A stretch of 63,290 bases of DNA, filler included, from Guillardia theta CCMP2712 (Eukaryota > Protista > Cryptophyta), in NCBI RefSeq assembly GCF_000315625.1. It is 4 parts of 4 records of this genome, joined end to end, with 100 filler letters (N's around TTAATTAATTAA, not from the genome) between each part and the next. Parts side by side here need not be neighbours in the genome. Positions count along the whole stretch, not along the records: positions 54,050 to 60,707 come from NW_005434200.1; 3 more parts are not named here. The stretch is one strand, 5' to 3'. The notes beneath the pieces were generated by a model. The model saw only the letters and a list, made by a program, of their open reading frames with translations, was not told the DNA's origin and searched no databases. Position 1 is the first letter of the stretch; the number at the start of each line of letters is the position of its first letter. Position numbers and translations under genes: made by a program. Of the stretch, positions 53,950-60,707 are shown in pieces.

Positions 53950-54256
53950 NNNNNNNNNNNNNNNNNNNNNNNNNNNNNNNNNNNNNNNNNNNNTTAATTA
54001 ATTAANNNNNNNNNNNNNNNNNNNNNNNNNNNNNNNNNNNNNNNNNNNNCCATTTTAGAGGACGGAGGAGGGAGTTGCAAGACAGCGAAGCGAAGTATCT
54101 TCCTGAAGAATCAAGGATGGGAAGCTATGATTCACGTCCACAGGGCTTAGATGGGTGAGAAGGATGAGCGTGAGAACCTGAGAGCCTCCGAGGCGGCGAA
54201 GACTCTGACAAGAGCAGAGGAGAGGAGGATTGGGTGCCGACAAGTTAATATCTTCG

Positions 54257-54420
54257 TTACTCAAAGTTAAGTTTAAAATCAGTACGAGGACAATCAGGTT
54301 AAAATCAGTACGAGTCAAGGTAGAATTCCTTTACTCAAAGAAGAGAGTTATAAATCAGTACGAGTCAAGGTAGAATTCCTTTACTCAAAGAAGAGAGTTA
54401 TAAATCAGTACGAGTCAAGG
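54257..54420. repeat. TTACTCAAAGTTAAG..AAATCAG motif followed by a 50-bp repeat x2.4 derived from it
   Basis: Period 50 (54301, 54351, 54401); the motif also occurs at 5792 and 28327. Confidence 0.75.
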
Positions 54421-54660
54421 ATTCCCAAACTTTAGCTGACCCGGCTGCCCGGCCCGGGCCCGGAGACGGTTAGTTAAGGGTCGCCGAGTTGAGTAAAAGG
54501 TTTGTTGAGCTGGGAGAGAGCGCACAGGTTTGTGCTGAGAGCGATGCAGTGAGGAGGCGGAGGGGAAGACAGAGATCAGAGAAGCAGAGTGACAAAAGAA
54601 AGAATGAACTTCGGAAGAAGAACACGCTTAGCCGGCTCTTGTTCACAAATCCAGGTGAAG

Positions 54661-56348
54661 ATGGAGGGTCTGTCAGATATTCTTGATGGAGGAGACCACA
54701 TTTCTCCGTGTATAGTCCTCACCGTCAGTCTTTCCTCGAGGAAGAGTGGTGCAGGTCTACCTGTGAGCACAAGGCAATGGAACGGCTACGTTGCTCTACC
54801 TGCGATAGAAAGACTTTGCAGTTGTATGTCCCTTGATCCTTGGACGACACGTTCAACTCATGTATGACATGAAGAGAGTTTCTAGCACACTGCTGATCGC
54901 TTCTGACCACTGCAATCAACAGAGATATCCTTCTTGTTTTTTCTCATGCGATNNNNNNNNNNNNNNNNNNNNNNNNNNNNNNNNNNNNNNNNNNNNNNNN
55001 NNNNNNNNNNNNNNNNNNNNNNNNNNNNNNNNNNNNNNNNNNNNNNNNNNNNNNNNNNNNNNNNNNNNNNNNNNNNNNNNNNATGCAGTTTTCTCCTGGA
55101 GGCCAGAAGTTTCGAAGCAAGCATATGGTCGATAGTATTGTAAGTGACATCGATACCTCGTGAGAGTTCGCCGACCAACAACTTCTGACGACCAGTTGCA
55201 GATGCTTTACGATTTCGGTAAAACCAATTCAGAAGTCATCGCAAAGGTAATTGAGCTCTGTACGTCAGCATGAAAAATGTTTGATATTCCTCCTTTTGAA
55301 GGTTCTTTCGAAGAATCATGCAGCAGTAGCCGGGATGATTACATGCGTTGAATCTAGGTAAACGTTGCTACTACCTCGTTCATATAAGAGCTGTAAGCGC
55401 ATTTACAGTACACCTGATGAAGCAGCCCTCAGTGAGAGTTACGATGGACCTCAACGAGCCGACCGTGCTCTCCAAGCAATGGTCATCCGATCAATGACGT
55501 CGTTGGGATTTCAAGACTTTTTCTCGGCTTCAGACTTTTATCAAGTGGAACCCGGATGCAAGCTCTTCCCTGAATACATGTCTTTCACAACCACCTTCAG
55601 CACCAATAGTATCGGCAGCAGCACCATCAGCAGCACAAGCAGCGGCATGACAAGCAGAACCATAACAACAAGCAGCTCCTCAAGCAGCTCCTCAAGCAGC
55701 ATCACAAGCAGCATCACAAGCAGCAGCAGCAACAGCATCGCATGCAGCAGCATCGCAGGCAACAGCATCGCAGGCAGCAGCAGCACCAGCACCAGCACCA
55801 GCACCAGCACCAGCACCAGCACCAGCACCAGCACCAGCACCAGCAGCACCAGCACCAGCACCAGCACCAGCACCAGCACCAGCAGCACCAGCACTTCGGT
55901 TTGTTGTCCTGCATTTTCCTTGTCCAATCAAGCTGAAAGCGTCAGCTCGATGAAGGCAGAAGACAAATCCTTGACTACAAGACCTCTTAGTGAAGATAGC
56001 GGACGAGGTTCTGCCAACTCGATCACAACCATTCGGACAGAACATGAAGAGATTCAAAGGGATAAATNNNNNNNNNNNNNNNNNNNNNNNNNNNNNNNNN
56101 NNNNNNNNNNNNNNNNNNNNNNNNNNNNNNNNNNNNNNNNNNNNNNNNNNNNNNNNNNNNNNNNNNNCTACAGGTACAGCTAGTGAGCTATCGCAGTCTA
56201 CAAGTACAGCTAGCGAGCTATCGCAGCCTACAAGTACAGCTAGTGAGCTATCGCAGTCTACAAGTACAGCTAGTGAGCTATCGCAGTCTACAAGTACAGC
56301 TAGTGAGCTATCGCAGTCTACAAGTACAGCTAGTGAGCTATCGCAGTC
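54661..56348 (+). CDS. Probable 5' exons (Ser/Thr-rich, TASELSQSTS 30-nt repeats) of the gene below; gapped
   Basis: Same strand, open frames running into the gaps; linkage unproven. Confidence 0.4.
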
Positions 56349-56941
56349 NNNNNNNNNNNNNNNNNNNNNNNNNNNNNNNNNNNNNNNNNNNNNNNNNNNN
56401 NNNNNNNNNNNNNNNNNNNNNNNNNNNNNNNNNNNNNNNNNNNNNNNNNNNNNNNNNNNNNNNNNNNNNNNNNNNNNNNNNNNNNNNNNNNNNNNNNNNN
56501 NNNNNNNNNNNNNNNNNNNNNNNNNNNNNNNNNNNNNNNNNNNNNNNNNNNNNNNNNNNNNNNNNNNNNNNNNNNNNNNNNNNNNNNNNNNNNNNNNNNN
56601 NNNNNNNNNNNNNNNNNNNNNNNNNNNNNNNNNNNNNNNNNNNNNNNNNNNNNNNNNNNNNNNNNNNNNNNNNNNNNNNNNNNNNNNNNNNNNNNNNNNN
56701 NNNNNNNNNNNNNNNNNNNNNNNNNNNNNNNNNNNNNNNNNNNNNNNNNNNNNNNNNNNNNNNNNNNNNNNNNNNNNNNNNNNNNNNNNNNNNNNNNNNN
56801 NNNNNNNNNNNNNNNNNNNNNNNNNNNNNNNNNNNNNNNNNNNNNNNNNNNNNNNNNNNNNNNNNNNNNNNNNNNNNNNNNNNNNNNNNNNNNNNNNNNN
56901 NNNNNNNNNNNNNNNNNNNNNNNNNNNNNNNNNNNNNNNNN

Positions 56942-59900
56942 CAAGCACAGTTCAACCACCCGACCTAGCATCAACACATCCGTCATCCAGACATAGTGGC
57001 TCAAAACCAAATTCAACATTGTCTGAAGCGTCAAGCAGCGCCTTGCCTGGCTTCGGGCAGACGAGCAGCGCCTTGCCAGGCTTCGGGCAGACGAGCAGCG
57101 CCTTGTCAGGCTTCGGGCAGACGAGCAGCGCCTTGCCAGGCTTCGGGCAGACGAGCAGCGCCTTGCCAGGCTTCGGGCAGACGAGCAGCGCCTTGTCAGG
57201 CTTCGGGCAGACGAGCAGCGCCTTGCCAGGCTTCGGGCAGACGAGCAGCGCCTTGTCAGGCTTCGGGGGCAGCACCGGGTCAGCATTCGGCGGAGCAGCT
57301 GGGCTCGGATCAGGAGGCAGCCAGGCGTCGTCGAGCGCTGGAGCGAGCTTGAGCTCGAGCGCGGCATCGAGCAGCGGGTCAGGCTTCGGGCAGACGAGCA
57401 GCGCCTTGTCAGGCTTCGGGCAGACGAGCAGCGCCTTGTCAGGCTTCGGGCAGACGAGCAGCGCCTTGTCAGGCTTCGGGGGCAGCACCGGGTCAGGATT
57501 CGGCGGAGCAGCTGGGCTCGGATCAGGAGGCAGCCAGGCGTCGTCGAGCGCTGGAGCGAGCTTGAGCTCGAGCGCGGCATCGAGCAGCGGGTCAGGCTTC
57601 GGGCAGACGAGCAGCGCCTTGTCAGGCTTCGGGCAGACGAGCAGCGCTTTATCAGGCTTCGGGCAGACGAGCAGCGCCTTGTCAGGCTTCGGGGGCAGCA
57701 CCGGGTCAGCATTCGGCGGAGCAGCTGGGCTCGGATCAGGAGGCAGCCAGGCGTCGTCGAGCGCTGGAGCGAGCTTGAGCTCGAGCGCGGCATCGAGCAG
57801 CGGGTCAGGCTTCGGGCAGACGAGCAGCGCCTTGCCTGGCTTCGGGGGCAGCACCGGGTCAGGATTCGGCGGAGCAGCTGGGCTCGGATCAGGAGGCAGC
57901 CAGGCGTCGTCGAGCGCTGGAGCGAGCTTGAGCTCGAGCGCGGCATCGAGCAGCGGGTCAGGCTTCGGGCAGACGAGCAGCGCCTTGTCAGGCTTCGGGC
58001 AGACGAGCAGCGCTTTATCAGGCTTCGGGCAGACGAGCAGCGCCTTGTCAGGCTCGGGGGCAGCACCGGGTCAGCATTCGGCGGAGCAGCTGGGCTCGGA
58101 TCAGGAGGCAGCCAGGCGTCGTCGAGCGCTGGAGCGAGCTTGAGCTCGAGCGCGGCATCGAGCAGCGGGTCAGGCTTCGGGCAGACGAGCAGCGCCTTGC
58201 CAGGCTTCGGGGGCAGCACCGGGTCAGGATTCGGCGGAGCAGCTGGGCTCGGATCAGGAGGCAGCCAGGCGTCGTCGAGCGCTGGAGCGAGCTTGAGCTC
58301 GAGCGCGGCATCGAGCAGCGGGTCAGGCTTCGGGCAGACGAGCAGCGCCTTGTCAGGCTTCGGGCAGACGAGCAGCGCCTTGTCAGGCTTCGGGCAGACG
58401 AGCAGCGGGTCAGACGTTGGGGATGGAAAGTCATGTGGCACTCAGGACACCCGGATCTGCAAGTATGAAGCTAGTCAAGGGCCTGATGGTACAGGTACCA
58501 CCTCTGCGAGTACACGAGGGTTGTATCTTTCGATTACGCACATGGCTGTATACTCGGGGAGCTCTTTTGAAGAACTCAGAGTCGGGGATTACTTGCTCAA
58601 ACGTTGTTTCCTTGAGCCGGGGAACCCGAGCCCAGCAGGCAGGACCGATGAACCATGTCCATTTGGATTTGGTAACAACTCTGGTTTTGCTGCTGTGAAT
58701 GGTTCAATGATTGGAGAAGCAACTCCGGCGTTTCCTCCTGCGCCATTGTTTCCGTCGAAACCGCAAGACCCAAGGTTCGCGCAGGTAGAGCATGTGCAGT
58801 TNNNNNNNNNNNNNNNNNNNNNNNNNNNNNNNNNNNNNNNNNNNNNNNNNNNNNNNNNNNNNNNNNNNNNNNNNNNNNNNNNNNNNNNNNNNNNNNNNNN
58901 NNNNNNNNNNNNNNNNNNNNNNNNNNNNNNNNNNNNNNNNNNNNNNNNNNNNNNNNNNNNNNNNNNNNNNNNNNNNNNNNNGGGGAAGCAGCTGGGATCT
59001 ATCGGCTTTCACAGCCACGACGGCAAGTTGCACTATTGCACGAAGGACATGTTTTCATCCGATCACATTGACTTCGGACCAAAATGCATGGCGGGAGACA
59101 GGATAGGATGCGGCATACTGAGCTTGACGAATGAGGCCAGTGCGATCTACTTTGTCAGGAATGGGATCGAGATAGGAAGAATGGATCTAGATCCTGACAT
59201 GTCGTTTCCCTTTGCTACCATCACCTCCAGTCATGGCGCCATGGTCGCCTTCGACTGCAAGCCCTGCCCTCCTCGTCCCGCCCTATCAGCTTGCCTTCTT
59301 CAAACTGCAGGCATTGATGTGCTAGACACGGTGACAGGCGAGTGGAGGGCAGGAAAGAAGGTGGGAAAGGAAGGTCCTCGAGGAGTTCCGGTCCTGTTCG
59401 AAGGGTCAGATGTGCTGCATTATGCCAAGGCAGGGGAGGTAAAACCTTCAGAGTCAGGAGCTATAGGAAACAGGAGAGTTTCCTACATGGTCTCTAGCGC
59501 TGGAGATGCTGCAAGCCCACGACACGGTCATCATCCAGAACTCTGAGTTGTCTCAATACTTTCTTGCTACTCTAGAGATCACAAAGCCTTGCAGTATTGT
59601 GGGCTTGTCTTTTTCTTGGAAAATCCCAAGTTGGTATCTGTCGGGTCTGCTGCCCTGAGAATCTCTGCTCCTGGAGTTGTTCTTGACTCTCTCTCCATCA
59701 TGGCTCTTTCATCTCTGAGTAAGAACTCCCCGTTTACCTCGGGTGGCTGTTGTGGAGTGTTGCTGGCGTCAGGTTCTTTGACAATGAAGAACGTAGAAGT
59801 CAGATGCCCCAACGGCTCCGCAGTCTGCATCAACGATACTGGTTGCCATGGGCTTCAAGTAGACGGCTGCAGGGTTGGACCTTGTGGGAGGCATGGTATC

Positions 59901-60707
59901 GTCTTAAGTTCATGCGCTGAGGAAATTATCGTGAAGAATTCAACGATAGAAAAATGTGCAATGATCGGTGTTGCGGCCAATGATCAGTGTAAGGCAAACT
60001 TTATGAACTTGAACATTTCAGGCTGCAACGTTGGTATCCATGCTTCTGGGGCAACCTTCAAGGTATCTGAGACAACCATCAAAGACTGCAAGGAATCAGC
60101 TGTTCGCGTCTTTTGGAATCAACCTTTCAATGCACAAAAAATCCGCTTGGAGACCTGCACGATCGAGAAGTGCTTCAGACCGATCGTGGCCGAGGGGAAG
60201 GGGCTCGAGATCGTTGTCCCCTCCTCTTGCATCATCGAAGGCTGCTCGCTCAAGAACGAAACGAAAGGAGGTGCGGTGATAGACTGGAAGAATGATCCCG
60301 ACCCGCCGGTTCTTGTAGAAGCCTTCACGCCGCAGGACAACTTCAGCCGCTACATGAAACTGATGCTGGGCCTGGGAACTGAAGTCTTGGTGAAGGTGCT
60401 GAGAAAGTGTTACAAGTCGAGAACAGGCAAGAACTGGAACCACAGGACGGGGCGAGAGATAGCCTCTCGGATGAATGACTACCAGCGAAGTAGATTGGGC
60501 AAAGCCATGCTTGAGCGGCTGAAGGAAGACGAAATGGATAGCTGGGACATCACGCTGCTCTCAGCTCTTCTGGTGAACAATCCTGGCTACATGGACTCGT
60601 CGAGCTTGGAACGAGCAGTGGAGTCACTGAGAGATCAGAGGAACGAGTTTGTTCACTCCGGTAGCTTCAAGGACCTCTCCATGGATCACGGCGACTTCCG
60701 ATCGAAG
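56942..60707 (+). CDS. Multidomain protein: FG-like repeats, Nup98-type GLEBS motif, SPRY, right-handed beta-helix, DZIP3-like HEPN
   Basis: (GFGQTSSALS)n; YLSITHMAVYSGSSFEELRVGDY; GSIGFHSHDG..FGPK..GDRIGCG..IYFVRNG; beta-helix repeats; WDITLLSALL..LRDQRNEFVH. One-base slip at ~58053; probable intron 59490-59594. Confidence 0.75.

What the first reader, a model, noticed from the sequence alone, without database searches (positions are those of the whole stretch)
56942..60707. Nucleoporin-like FG/GLEBS module fused to SPRY, beta-helix and HEPN RNase
Seen: dozens of FG-containing repeats; a GLEBS-like motif (SITHM..Y...SFEELRVGDY, ~58520-58590); SPRY (~58982-59260); a beta-helix (~59650-60260); and WDITLL..RNEFVH (60639-60656). 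Known: GLEBS binds the mRNA export factor Rae1/Gle2, and RxxxxH is the HEPN RNase active site. Real Nup98 carries an autoprotease domain, not these. Inference: an RNase tethered to the pore or export machinery, possibly for RNA surveillance or antiviral defence. It lies next to the retroelement array, but no link is shown.
Basis: partly seen in the sequence, partly recalled or inferred. Interest (0 to 1): 0.78.

Follow-up and report, generated by a model that had tools for sequence, protein, structure and literature searches.

The report
Nucleoporin-like FG/GLEBS head on HEPN RNase-kinase
A small, poorly assembled scaffold of the alga Guillardia theta carries a gene that joins a nuclear-pore-type FG-repeat/Rae1-binding (GLEBS) head to SPRY, beta-helix and a predicted HEPN ribonuclease domain; it belongs to a cryptophyte HEPN-kinase family I found no description of, so it may be an RNase/kinase aimed at the mRNA export route.

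Summary
The piece is a whole 6,658-nt scaffold of Guillardia theta CCMP2712.

- **FG repeats:** 33 FG dipeptides.
- **GLEBS (58434-58610):** a profile built with five metagenomic relatives hits the Nup98 GLEBS of PDB 3MMY at E 1e-7.
- **SPRY:** its C-terminal half follows the gap (PDB 2YYO, E 3e-8). The gap lies inside SPRY, and another run's contig bridges it with exactly 180 letters, so it is in frame.
- **Beta-helix:** Pfam E 4e-13.
- **HEPN:** DZIP3-like, with RNEFVH matching the family's invariant N/H and ≥90% conserved R. A model of a 91%-identical relative has pLDDT 91 and TM 0.79 to DZIP3-HEPN models.

**Corrections**
- The "intron" 59490-59594 is coding. It holds the conserved beta-helix cap in another frame. 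Contigs from two other runs carry a 1-nt deletion and a 1-nt insertion that give one open frame.
- The window copy therefore has three frame breaks, either reference errors or a decaying copy.

**New**
- Relatives in five cryptophyte genera continue from HEPN into a Ser/Thr kinase.
- Their N-termini vary (RRM, La, CCCH). Only this gene has FG/GLEBS.

Rae1 binding, pore localisation, RNase activity and expression are untested.

The parts
56943..58055 (+). Lead-in and FG-repeat array, first part (frame of 56944). Units are GFGQTSSAL[S/P] and a 40-aa G/S/A-rich unit with FGG. It holds 25 FG.
   Evidence: Of 5 variable sites among the repeat copies, 3 are synonymous in the FG frame.
58053..58056 (.). 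Frame break. This repeat copy reads GGCTCGGGGG where its sister copies read GGCTTCGGGGG, one T fewer. The FG peptide continues in another frame.
   Evidence: No read data were obtained here.
58056..58421 (+). FG-repeat array, second part (frame of 58140).
58434..58610 (+). GLEBS (Gle2/Rae1-binding sequence) of the Nup98 type. The core SITHMAVYSGSSFEELRVGDY lies at 58530-58592.
   Evidence: Pfam 22.4 bits, E 1.3e-4. Five metagenomic relatives at tblastn E 2e-14 to 7e-8; two of them pass Pfam's cutoff. The profile hits 3MMY_B at E 1e-7. All 12 invariant columns are present.
58659..58688 (+). Three more FG/GF after the GLEBS (PFGFGNNSGF). The GLEBS is therefore embedded in FG sequence, as in Nup98.
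58761..58801 (+). Conserved motif that precedes SPRY in relatives (PQDPRFAQVEHVQ, then FDQGKIKFEG from contig ends reading into the gap).
   Evidence: It aligns to P0003 202-224 and P0004 167-189, with 0 of 500 shuffles reaching the score. The match ends 54-55 residues before their SPRY C-half.
58802..58981 (.). Assembly gap inside the SPRY domain, covering its N-terminal half. It is 180 letters long in a bridging contig, so in frame.
   Evidence: joint table, record 1 of X1; loose ends of X2 and X6
58983..59264 (+). SPRY domain, C-terminal half.
   Evidence: PDB 2YYO (SPRYD3) at E 3e-8. blastp to the SPRY of P0008, P0010 and P0044 at E 2e-17 to 1e-13. Those relatives pass the Pfam SPRY cutoff.
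59313..59447 (+). Small conserved linker segment between SPRY and the beta-helix. Its fold was not tested.
   Evidence: phmmer to P0034, P0004 and P0003 at E 1e-6 to 1e-5
59476..59604 (+). N-terminal cap of the beta-helix, readable only in the +1 frame of the window. Frame breaks lie near 59472 and 59614.
   Evidence: blastp to P0004 404-452 at E 2e-5. X2 contig: 1 nt fewer at 59472 and 1 nt more after 59614. With X2's listed differences applied there is one open frame.
59628..60287 (+). Right-handed parallel beta-helix.
   Evidence: Pfam Beta_helix E 3.6e-13, 49.9 bits against a cutoff of 25.9
60333..60707 (+). DZIP3-like HEPN domain, cut off by the scaffold end after about 125 of about 175 residues. 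WDITLL lies at 60543-60560 and R-N-x3-H (RNEFVH) at 60639-60656.

Best explanation
The piece holds a fragmentary copy of one large Guillardia theta gene. Its product reads as follows:
1. a low-charge FG-repeat domain;
2. a Nup98-type GLEBS, followed by a few more FG;
3. SPRY;
4. a small linker segment;
5. a right-handed beta-helix;
6. a DZIP3-like HEPN domain with an intact R-N-x3-H motif;
7. beyond the scaffold end, by homology, a Ser/Thr protein kinase domain.

Shown here:
- the identity of each domain;
- their contiguity in DNA;
- conservation of the putative catalytic residues across a cryptophyte family;
- that the family core is HEPN followed by kinase, with interchangeable N-terminal modules, several of them RNA-binding (RRM, La, CCCH).

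Inferred:
- The HEPN domain is an endoribonuclease.
- The kinase domain controls it through oligomerisation or phosphorylation, as in Ire1 and RNase L, where a kinase fold drives dimerisation of a HEPN-type KEN domain.
- The N-terminal module decides where or on what the enzyme acts.
- In this member the FG/GLEBS head would bind Rae1/Gle2 and partition into the FG phase of the pore. That would place the RNase-kinase on the mRNA export route, for RNA surveillance or defence.

The three frame breaks in the window are most likely errors of a low-coverage scaffold, or lesions of one of two near-identical copies.
For: **Organism and existing gene model.**: P0001 is GUITHDRAFT_122848, partial, on a contig of 6,658 nt.

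**Domains.**
- Beta_helix and GLEBS.
- SPRY.
- GLEBS profile at E 1e-7 to the Rae1-bound Nup98 peptide. The eight best hits are all Nup98.
- HEPN family alignment with invariant D, N and H and at least 90% R. Fifteen of 39 members hit HEPN_DZIP3. The best PDB profile hit is Csm6, at its RN..H motif.
- pLDDT 91; TM 0.75-0.79 over 157-165 residues to DZIP3-like HEPN models. The top PDB match is Csm6 at Z 8.7, followed by sacsin HEPN, the Swt1 C-terminal domain, Cas13 and AbiF.

**Contiguity.**
- FG, GLEBS and the pre-SPRY motif share one open frame, 58140-58801.
- Contigs of two later runs match 58559-58801 with no differences and run on into the gap. A third run bridges the gap with 180 letters.
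- The pre- and post-gap sequences align to consecutive parts of one SPRY region in relatives.
- SPRY, beta-helix, HEPN and Pkinase occur in single proteins P0003 (Hanusia phi, 1,285 aa) and P0044 (source organism not known).

**Kinase.** L001, 93% identical in DNA, runs past the scaffold end into a kinase-like N-lobe. Its tail is 50% identical to P0016, which has Pkinase at E 8e-32.

**FG frame is coding.** Three of 5 variable sites among the repeats are synonymous in that frame.
Against: - The window copy is not an open gene. It has a 1-nt break in the FG array near 58055 and two more near 59472 and 59614.
- After the first break, the first Met in frame lies inside the GLEBS. FG/GLEBS is translated only if that break is an artefact.
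- No RNA evidence exists. The only certain RNA run laid 0 reads (about 6% of it was read). X2 is only guessed to be RNA.
- The window's own GLEBS and HEPN matches are below Pfam's cutoffs.
- The HEPN model is of a 91%-identical relative, because the window's domain is truncated.
- None of the 74 related proteins fetched has an FG-rich head or a GLEBS. The fusion is therefore seen in one genome only.
- Rae1 binding, pore localisation, RNase activity and kinase control are all untested.
Confidence: 0.6

Rival explanations
1. The window copy is a decaying duplicate (pseudogene) of an intact paralogue. The architecture is real for the family, but this locus makes no protein.
For: - There are three frame breaks within about 1.6 kb.
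- Contigs of X1 and X2 differ from the window by 20-27 substitutions plus indels, while other contigs of the same runs match the window exactly. This suggests two copies.
- The certain RNA run gave 0 reads.
Against: - Each frame segment stays open over long stretches.
- All family-invariant residues of GLEBS and HEPN are kept.
- At 59045-59086, all three runs disagree with the window at full depth. That fits reference errors in a tiny scaffold with four gaps.
- The breaks coincide with dense clusters of mismatches, as low-quality read ends would give.
Confidence: 0.25
2. The FG/GLEBS stretch is not part of the SPRY-HEPN protein. It would be an assembly chimera, or an untranslated or separately translated upstream region left over from a Nup98 duplicate.
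For: - No relative has this head.
- A frame break separates most FG repeats from the rest.
- NCBI's model starts only inside SPRY.
Against: - One open frame runs from the FG repeats through the GLEBS into the conserved pre-SPRY motif.
- Contigs of runs from 2018 and 2021 reproduce 58559-58801 exactly and continue into SPRY.
- The GLEBS invariants and the mostly synonymous repeat variation argue for translation.
Confidence: 0.08
3. The HEPN domain is not a nuclease here. It would act as an RNA- or ligand-binding or dimerisation module of a signalling kinase, and the FG/GLEBS head would serve a Rae1-linked role outside the pore, in the way Bub1 joins a GLEBS to a kinase.
For: - Eukaryotic Swt1 HEPN domains are thought to be inactive sensors (PMC3710099).
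- The kinase is the best-conserved partner of this HEPN.
- Bub1 combines GLEBS and kinase (from my own knowledge, not tested here).
Against: - N and H of R-N-x3-H are invariant, and R is kept in at least 90% of 39 family members. That is the pattern of active HEPN RNases.
- The GLEBS profile hits only Nup98 in the PDB, not Bub1 or Mad3.
Confidence: 0.15

Closest known systems
Nup98 / Nup116 / Nup145N (FG nucleoporins with GLEBS)
   Same: It has a low-charge FG-repeat domain with a GLEBS embedded between FG repeats. The GLEBS profile matches the Rae1-bound Nup98 peptide of 3MMY at E 1e-7 over nearly its full length.
   Different: No autoproteolytic (Nucleoporin2 / peptidase S59) domain follows. 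SPRY, beta-helix and HEPN follow instead. The repeats are GFGQ/GFGG, not GLFG. It is not the Nup98 orthologue.
DZIP3/hRUL138-like HEPN family (Pfam PF18738; Anantharaman et al. 2013, PMC3710099)
   Same: It shares the helical HEPN fold and the WD...LRxxRNxxxH signature. It is the nearest family by Pfam (15 of 39 members), by language-model features (0.90) and by predicted structure (TM 0.79).
   Different: Scores are below Pfam's cutoff. The known family is mainly animal and is fused to TPR, RING, NACHT, Death and similar domains. Here it is in cryptophytes, followed by a protein kinase and preceded by SPRY and a beta-helix.
Ire1 and RNase L (kinase or pseudokinase plus KEN, a HEPN-type RNase)
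   Same: One polypeptide combines a protein-kinase fold with a HEPN RNase domain and a separate sensor or targeting region. This is the basis of the proposed control by kinase-driven oligomerisation.
   Different: The order is reversed (HEPN before kinase). The HEPN is DZIP3-like, not KEN. The N-terminal modules are unrelated. The kinase itself is not inside the window.
Swt1 (pore-associated endoribonuclease with C-terminal HEPN)
   Same: It is a nuclease with a HEPN domain acting on mRNPs at the nuclear pore (PMC3710099). The Swt1 C-terminal domain is among the fold matches at Z 6.7, and there are weak Pfam HEPN_Swt1 hits.
   Different: In Swt1 the catalytic domain is PIN and the HEPN is probably inactive. 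Swt1 has no FG/GLEBS, SPRY, beta-helix or kinase.
Bub1 / BubR1 (GLEBS plus kinase)
   Same: A GLEBS motif and a Ser/Thr kinase domain sit in one protein (from my own knowledge).
   Different: The GLEBS here is of the Nup98 type: no Bub1 or Mad3 chain appears among the PDB hits. It also sits within FG repeats.

Membership tests
Nup98-type nucleoporin | FG-repeat domain | tested here: met
   33 FG dipeptides and almost no charged residues. The motif is GFGQ/GFGG rather than GLFG.
Nup98-type nucleoporin | GLEBS (Gle2/Rae1-binding sequence) | tested here: met
   The window alone scores 22.4 bits in Pfam, below 27. A profile with five relatives hits Nup98 GLEBS chains at E 1e-7. Relatives L003 and L004 pass Pfam's cutoff. 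Binding itself was not tested.
Nup98-type nucleoporin | C-terminal autoproteolytic domain (Pfam Nucleoporin2 / peptidase S59) | tested here: not met
   No such Pfam hit in any piece. The frame runs from the GLEBS straight into SPRY.
HEPN superfamily | All-helical HEPN fold | tested here: met
   Model of P0002:102-281 (91% identical to the window's part), pLDDT 91. TM 0.75-0.79 to DZIP3-like HEPN models. PDB matches: Csm6 Z 8.7, sacsin HEPN 6.8, Swt1 C-terminal domain 6.7. Foldseek on the PDB alone found nothing significant.
HEPN superfamily | R-x4-6-H motif | tested here: met
   RNEFVH at 60639-60656. N and H are invariant and R is kept in at least 90% of 39 family members.
HEPN_DZIP3 (PF18738) | Score at or above Pfam's gathering cutoff (27 bits) | tested here: not met
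   The closest relative scores 20-23.3 bits. The best E-value among 39 members is 1.2e-5. This looks like a sister group rather than a member by Pfam's rule.
SPRY (PF00622) | SPRY beta-sandwich sequence profile | tested here: inconclusive
   The window fragment gives no Pfam hit because half the domain is in the gap. It matches PDB 2YYO at E 3e-8 and aligns to SPRY domains of relatives that pass Pfam's cutoff.
Right-handed beta-helix (PF13229) | Score above the cutoff | tested here: met
   49.9 bits against 25.9, E 3.6e-13.
Ire1 / RNase L | Kinase domain followed by a KEN domain | tested here: not met
   In relatives the HEPN precedes the kinase. No KEN or Ribonuc_2-5A Pfam hit was found.
Protein kinase (PF00069) | Kinase domain in this gene | not testable with these tools
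   The scaffold ends inside HEPN. L001 (93% DNA identity) continues into a kinase-like N-lobe. Fifteen relatives have Pkinase or PK_Tyr_Ser-Thr after HEPN. Contigs of X2 and X6 run about 1.46 kb beyond the scaffold end, but their letters are not available.

The most novel reading that the evidence does not exclude
Cryptophytes have evolved their own RNase L/Ire1-like system: HEPN-kinase enzymes with swappable RNA-related heads. In Guillardia one member has captured the FG/GLEBS module of Nup98, so the enzyme docks on Rae1. The partner could be either the host Rae1 at the nuclear pore or the orphan red-alga-derived Rae1. Irwin and Keeling (PMC6411479) reported no algal-related (nucleomorph-derived) Nup98 for cryptophytes, unlike chlorarachniophytes, and call that Rae1's role ambiguous. 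The gene would then be a pore- or nucleomorph-linked RNA surveillance or antiviral nuclease.
Probability: 0.12. Interest if true: 0.85.

Novelty: new variant of a known kind. Interest (0 to 1): 0.62.

Why it matters
All the domains are known, but the combinations are not.

- A DZIP3-like HEPN followed by an apparently active Ser/Thr kinase, often preceded by SPRY and a beta-helix, recurs in at least five cryptophyte genera. Its heads are RNA-binding (RRM, La, CCCH). This looks like an independent invention of the Ire1/RNase L logic.
- I found no description of it. One search for HEPN with Guillardia returned only unrelated papers, and the 2013 HEPN survey lists no kinase fusion for the DZIP3 family.
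- A Nup98-type FG/GLEBS module on such an enzyme would be a rare case of a nucleoporin's transport-factor handle being reused to aim a nuclease.
- It gives a concrete candidate partner for the functionally unexplained second Rae1 of cryptophytes.
- It is also a practical warning.

Tried and rejected
- phmmer of the 220-aa FG/GLEBS piece against PDB sequences found no Nup98. A 60-aa query found only Nup98 GLEBS chains, but at E 0.38. Significance came only with the profile.
- The Atlas feature search on the GLEBS piece gave Nup42p at 0.77, too weak to use.
- Foldseek of the HEPN model against the PDB gave nothing at E <= 0.001.
- The word-index protein search found only P0001 and P0002 for both queries. 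The third allowed search was not used, because its length window would exclude full-length Nup98.
- Complex prediction on two copies of the HEPN domain gave no verdict (score 0.06). It is evidence neither for nor against dimerisation.
- The raw RNA run X22 laid 0 reads, so expression and splicing remain open.
- The bacterial promoter/terminator scan of 59400-59700 was irrelevant and empty.
- I first considered an alternative intron at 59439-59630 (GT..AG, 192 nt, in frame; note). I dropped it when the +1 frame proved to encode the conserved beta-helix cap.
- I first read the ATG at the start of the L001 ORF as a possible separate gene start. The frame is open upstream to the contig end and the Met is internal (SGIPKMVSVG), so I rejected that.
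- The FG array (57034-58407) was deliberately not sent to read laying, which turns long repeats away. The break at 58055 therefore has no read evidence.
- No exon joining was done for any search. Pieces were searched apart.
Full report
**What the piece is.** Places 54050-60707 are one whole 6,658-nt scaffold of the cryptophyte alga Guillardia theta CCMP2712. The word-index search returned GUITHDRAFT_122848 (P0001, "partial", 487 aa) on a contig of exactly that length. The scaffold has four N runs: 54953-55082, 56068-56167, 56349-56941 and 58802-58981. It is therefore a weak assembly made of short contigs.

**FG repeats.**
- The frame of 56944 holds 25 FG in 369 aa, with only 4 charged residues. 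After a break, the frame of 58140 holds 8 more.
- The units are GFGQTSSAL[S/P] and a 40-aa G/S/A-rich unit with FGG. Their DNA is 97-99% identical between copies.
- Of the 5 sites that vary among copies, 3 are synonymous in the FG frame. This is a small sample, but it points to that frame being the coding one.
- Near 58055 one repeat reads GGCTCGGGGG where its sisters read GGCTTCGGGGG. The FG peptide then continues in another frame. I have no read evidence for this place.

**GLEBS.**
- Pfam Nup98_GLEBS matches 58530-58592 at E 1.3e-4 and 22.4 bits, below the cutoff of 27.
- A 60-aa query hits only four chains among all PDB sequences. All four are Nup98 GLEBS peptides solved with Rae1, but at E 0.38.
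- A scan of metagenome contigs found five loci encoding relatives of this stretch, at tblastn E 2e-14 to 7e-8.
  - L003 has an FG-repeat ORF followed by a GLEBS that passes Pfam's cutoff (34.9 bits).
  - L004 has two GLEBS copies (46.8 bits).
- The six sequences share 12 invariant columns, I-T-x-M-x2-Y-x3-S-F-E-E-x-R-V-G-D.
- Their profile hits 3MMY_B at E 1e-7 over residues 6-56 of 56. The eight best hits are all Nup98.
- The motif is thus a real Nup98-type GLEBS. It is also followed by PFGFGNNSGF, so it sits inside FG sequence as in Nup98.

**The gap and SPRY.**
- I laid four runs on 58408-60707, 2,300 letters.
- A 690-nt contig of X1 lies on 58747-58801 and 58982-59437 with exactly 180 letters between. 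The gap is therefore real sequence of that length and is in frame.
- Contigs of X2 and X6 match 58559-58801 without any difference. They read on into the gap (giving F-DQGKIKFEG) and out of it (GSMV before GKQLGS).
- The post-gap part matches PDB 2YYO (SPRYD3) at E 3e-8. It also matches the SPRY domains of relatives at E 2e-17 to 1e-13.
- The pre-gap motif aligns to P0003 202-224 and P0004 167-189, with 0 of 500 shuffles reaching the score. That match ends 54-55 residues before their SPRY C-half, against 47 in the window.
- The gap therefore hides the N-terminal half of one SPRY domain. It does not join unrelated genes.

**The "intron" is not an intron.**
- The frame of 58140 stops at 59544, and the same frame reopens at 59589.
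- No contig shows that joint. Contigs of X1 and X2 run straight through.
- The +1 frame of 59476-59604 reads EFPTWSLALEMLQAHDTVIIQN...ITKPCSIVG. This aligns to P0004 404-452 (E 2e-5) and to P0034, at exactly the position between the linker segment and the first beta-helix rung.
- The X2 contig has 1 nt fewer at 59472 and 1 nt more after 59614.
- In a script I applied X2's listed differences to the window. The result is one open frame...KPSESGASVEVEFPTLSLALEMLQ...CSIVGARATLGIPKLVSVGSAALRIS....
- At 59045-59086 all three runs disagree with the window at full depth. Elsewhere some contigs match the window exactly and others differ.
- So either the reference has errors or there are two near-identical copies. 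I cannot tell which.

**Beta-helix and HEPN.**
- Pfam Beta_helix scores E 3.6e-13.
- The tail of the window gives only HEPN_Swt1 at E 0.09, because the scaffold ends inside the domain.
- P0002/L001, a metagenomic relative (93% DNA identity, 91% protein identity), completes the domain. It scores HEPN_DZIP3 at E 6e-5 to 6e-4.
- The exhaustive search with the L001 ORF found 51 representatives.
- An alignment of 39 HEPN segments has invariant D (in WD), N and H. W, W, L, L, R and R are kept in at least 90%. The signature is WDITLL...LRxxRNxLxH.
- Fifteen members hit HEPN_DZIP3, four hit HEPN_Swt1, and single members hit five other HEPN families.
- The profile's best PDB hit is Csm6, at its RN..H motif, but at E 0.28.
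- The AlphaFold model has pLDDT 91.
  - It matches predicted DZIP3-like HEPN models at TM 0.75-0.79, with 157-165 residues aligned at 2.3-2.8 A.
  - In the PDB the best match is Csm6 (Z 8.7, the only Z >= 8). Sacsin HEPN, another Csm6, the Swt1 C-terminal domain, Cas13 and AbiF score 6.2-6.8.
- Language-model features agree.
- The window's own RNEFVH (60639-60656) is the R-N-x3-H motif.

**The family.**
- Named members come from Hanusia phi, Rhodomonas salina and R. abbreviata, Geminigera cryophila, Hemiselmis rufescens and G. theta. Many of these are transcriptome-derived.
- Fifteen of the 20 proteins scanned have Pkinase or PK_Tyr_Ser-Thr after the HEPN.
- P0003 (1,285 aa) reads SPRY 250-359, Beta_helix 532-680, HEPN 714-890, Pkinase 913-1177. 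It keeps HRDLKPSN and DFG.
- N-termini vary: RRM (P0009), La plus CCCH (P0010), and a MIB/HERC2-type SH3 (P0004).
- L001 continues past the HEPN into a kinase-like N-lobe. Its tail is 50% identical to P0016, which has Pkinase.
- None of the 74 proteins fetched has an FG-rich head or a GLEBS.

**How it probably works.**
- Shown: the architecture, and the conserved catalytic-type residues.
- Inferred: a HEPN endoribonuclease coupled to a kinase, as in Ire1 and RNase L. The N-terminal module would select the site or the substrate.
- In this member the FG/GLEBS head would bind Rae1/Gle2 and enter the FG phase of the pore. That places the enzyme on the mRNA export path.
- Swt1 is a precedent for a HEPN-bearing nuclease at the pore (PMC3710099).
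- Cryptophytes have a second, red-alga-related Rae1 whose role is called ambiguous (PMC6411479). It is a possible alternative partner.

**Limits.**
- There is no RNA evidence.
- The window copy has three frame breaks.
- The fusion with FG/GLEBS is seen in one genome only.
- Rae1 binding could not be modelled, and the homodimer job gave no verdict.

**Verdict.** The domains are real and the combination is unusual.

Noticed in passing
L004:3774-4211, L006:2561-2665, L007:4717-4836 (metagenome contigs): Nup98-type GLEBS motifs, two in tandem in L004, sit in a large protein that is not Nup98. Neighbouring ORFs on the same strand give an LRRK2-type ARM hit (above Pfam's cutoff) and sub-cutoff Jacalin and RanBP zinc-finger hits. 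GLEBS may have spread to several non-nucleoporin proteins in some protists.
   Followed up: partly
L001:1400-1632: In the close relative, the glycine-rich loop of the kinase N-lobe reads KARARQGGSVY, where Hanusia P0003 has KAGAGGMGAVY. The kinase of the Guillardia-type copy may be a pseudokinase, as in RNase L. An intron seems to follow ALKFYK before LVEGYLIVIMMLVEGISLD.
   Followed up: no
window 59045-59086 and 59954-59991, 60215, 60533-60536: At 59045-59086 all three runs (X1, X2, X6) differ from the window at full depth. Further on, X2 differs while X6 matches the window. This means reference errors, a second near-identical copy, or strain differences.
   Followed up: partly
window 55365-56068 and 56168-56348: Upstream, between gaps, lie a Ser/Thr-rich low-complexity ORF with (CAGCAC)n-type repeats and six copies of a 30-nt unit encoding TSTASELSQS. 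They may be further N-terminal disordered parts of the same gene, but the gaps hide any link. The first stretch gave no Pfam hit.
   Followed up: partly
window 54298-54420: A 50-nt tandem repeat in 2.5 copies at 98% identity, near the scaffold start. Its meaning is unknown.
   Followed up: no
L002:8001-9152 (G. theta scaffold JH992977.1): GUITHDRAFT_134879 (P0011, 383 aa) is a single-exon paralogue with the same HEPN-like domain at 194-367. It gives no Pfam hit at all at E <= 0.001, so no kinase, SPRY or beta-helix was detected, and it sits among unrelated genes on a 1-Mb scaffold.
   Followed up: partly
P0010 (ENA metagenome, 1,381 aa) and P0008 (1,051 aa): These family members have SPRY, beta-helix and HEPN but no detected kinase. 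P0010 adds a CCCH finger and a La domain between the beta-helix and HEPN. The kinase is therefore frequent but not obligatory.
   Followed up: no
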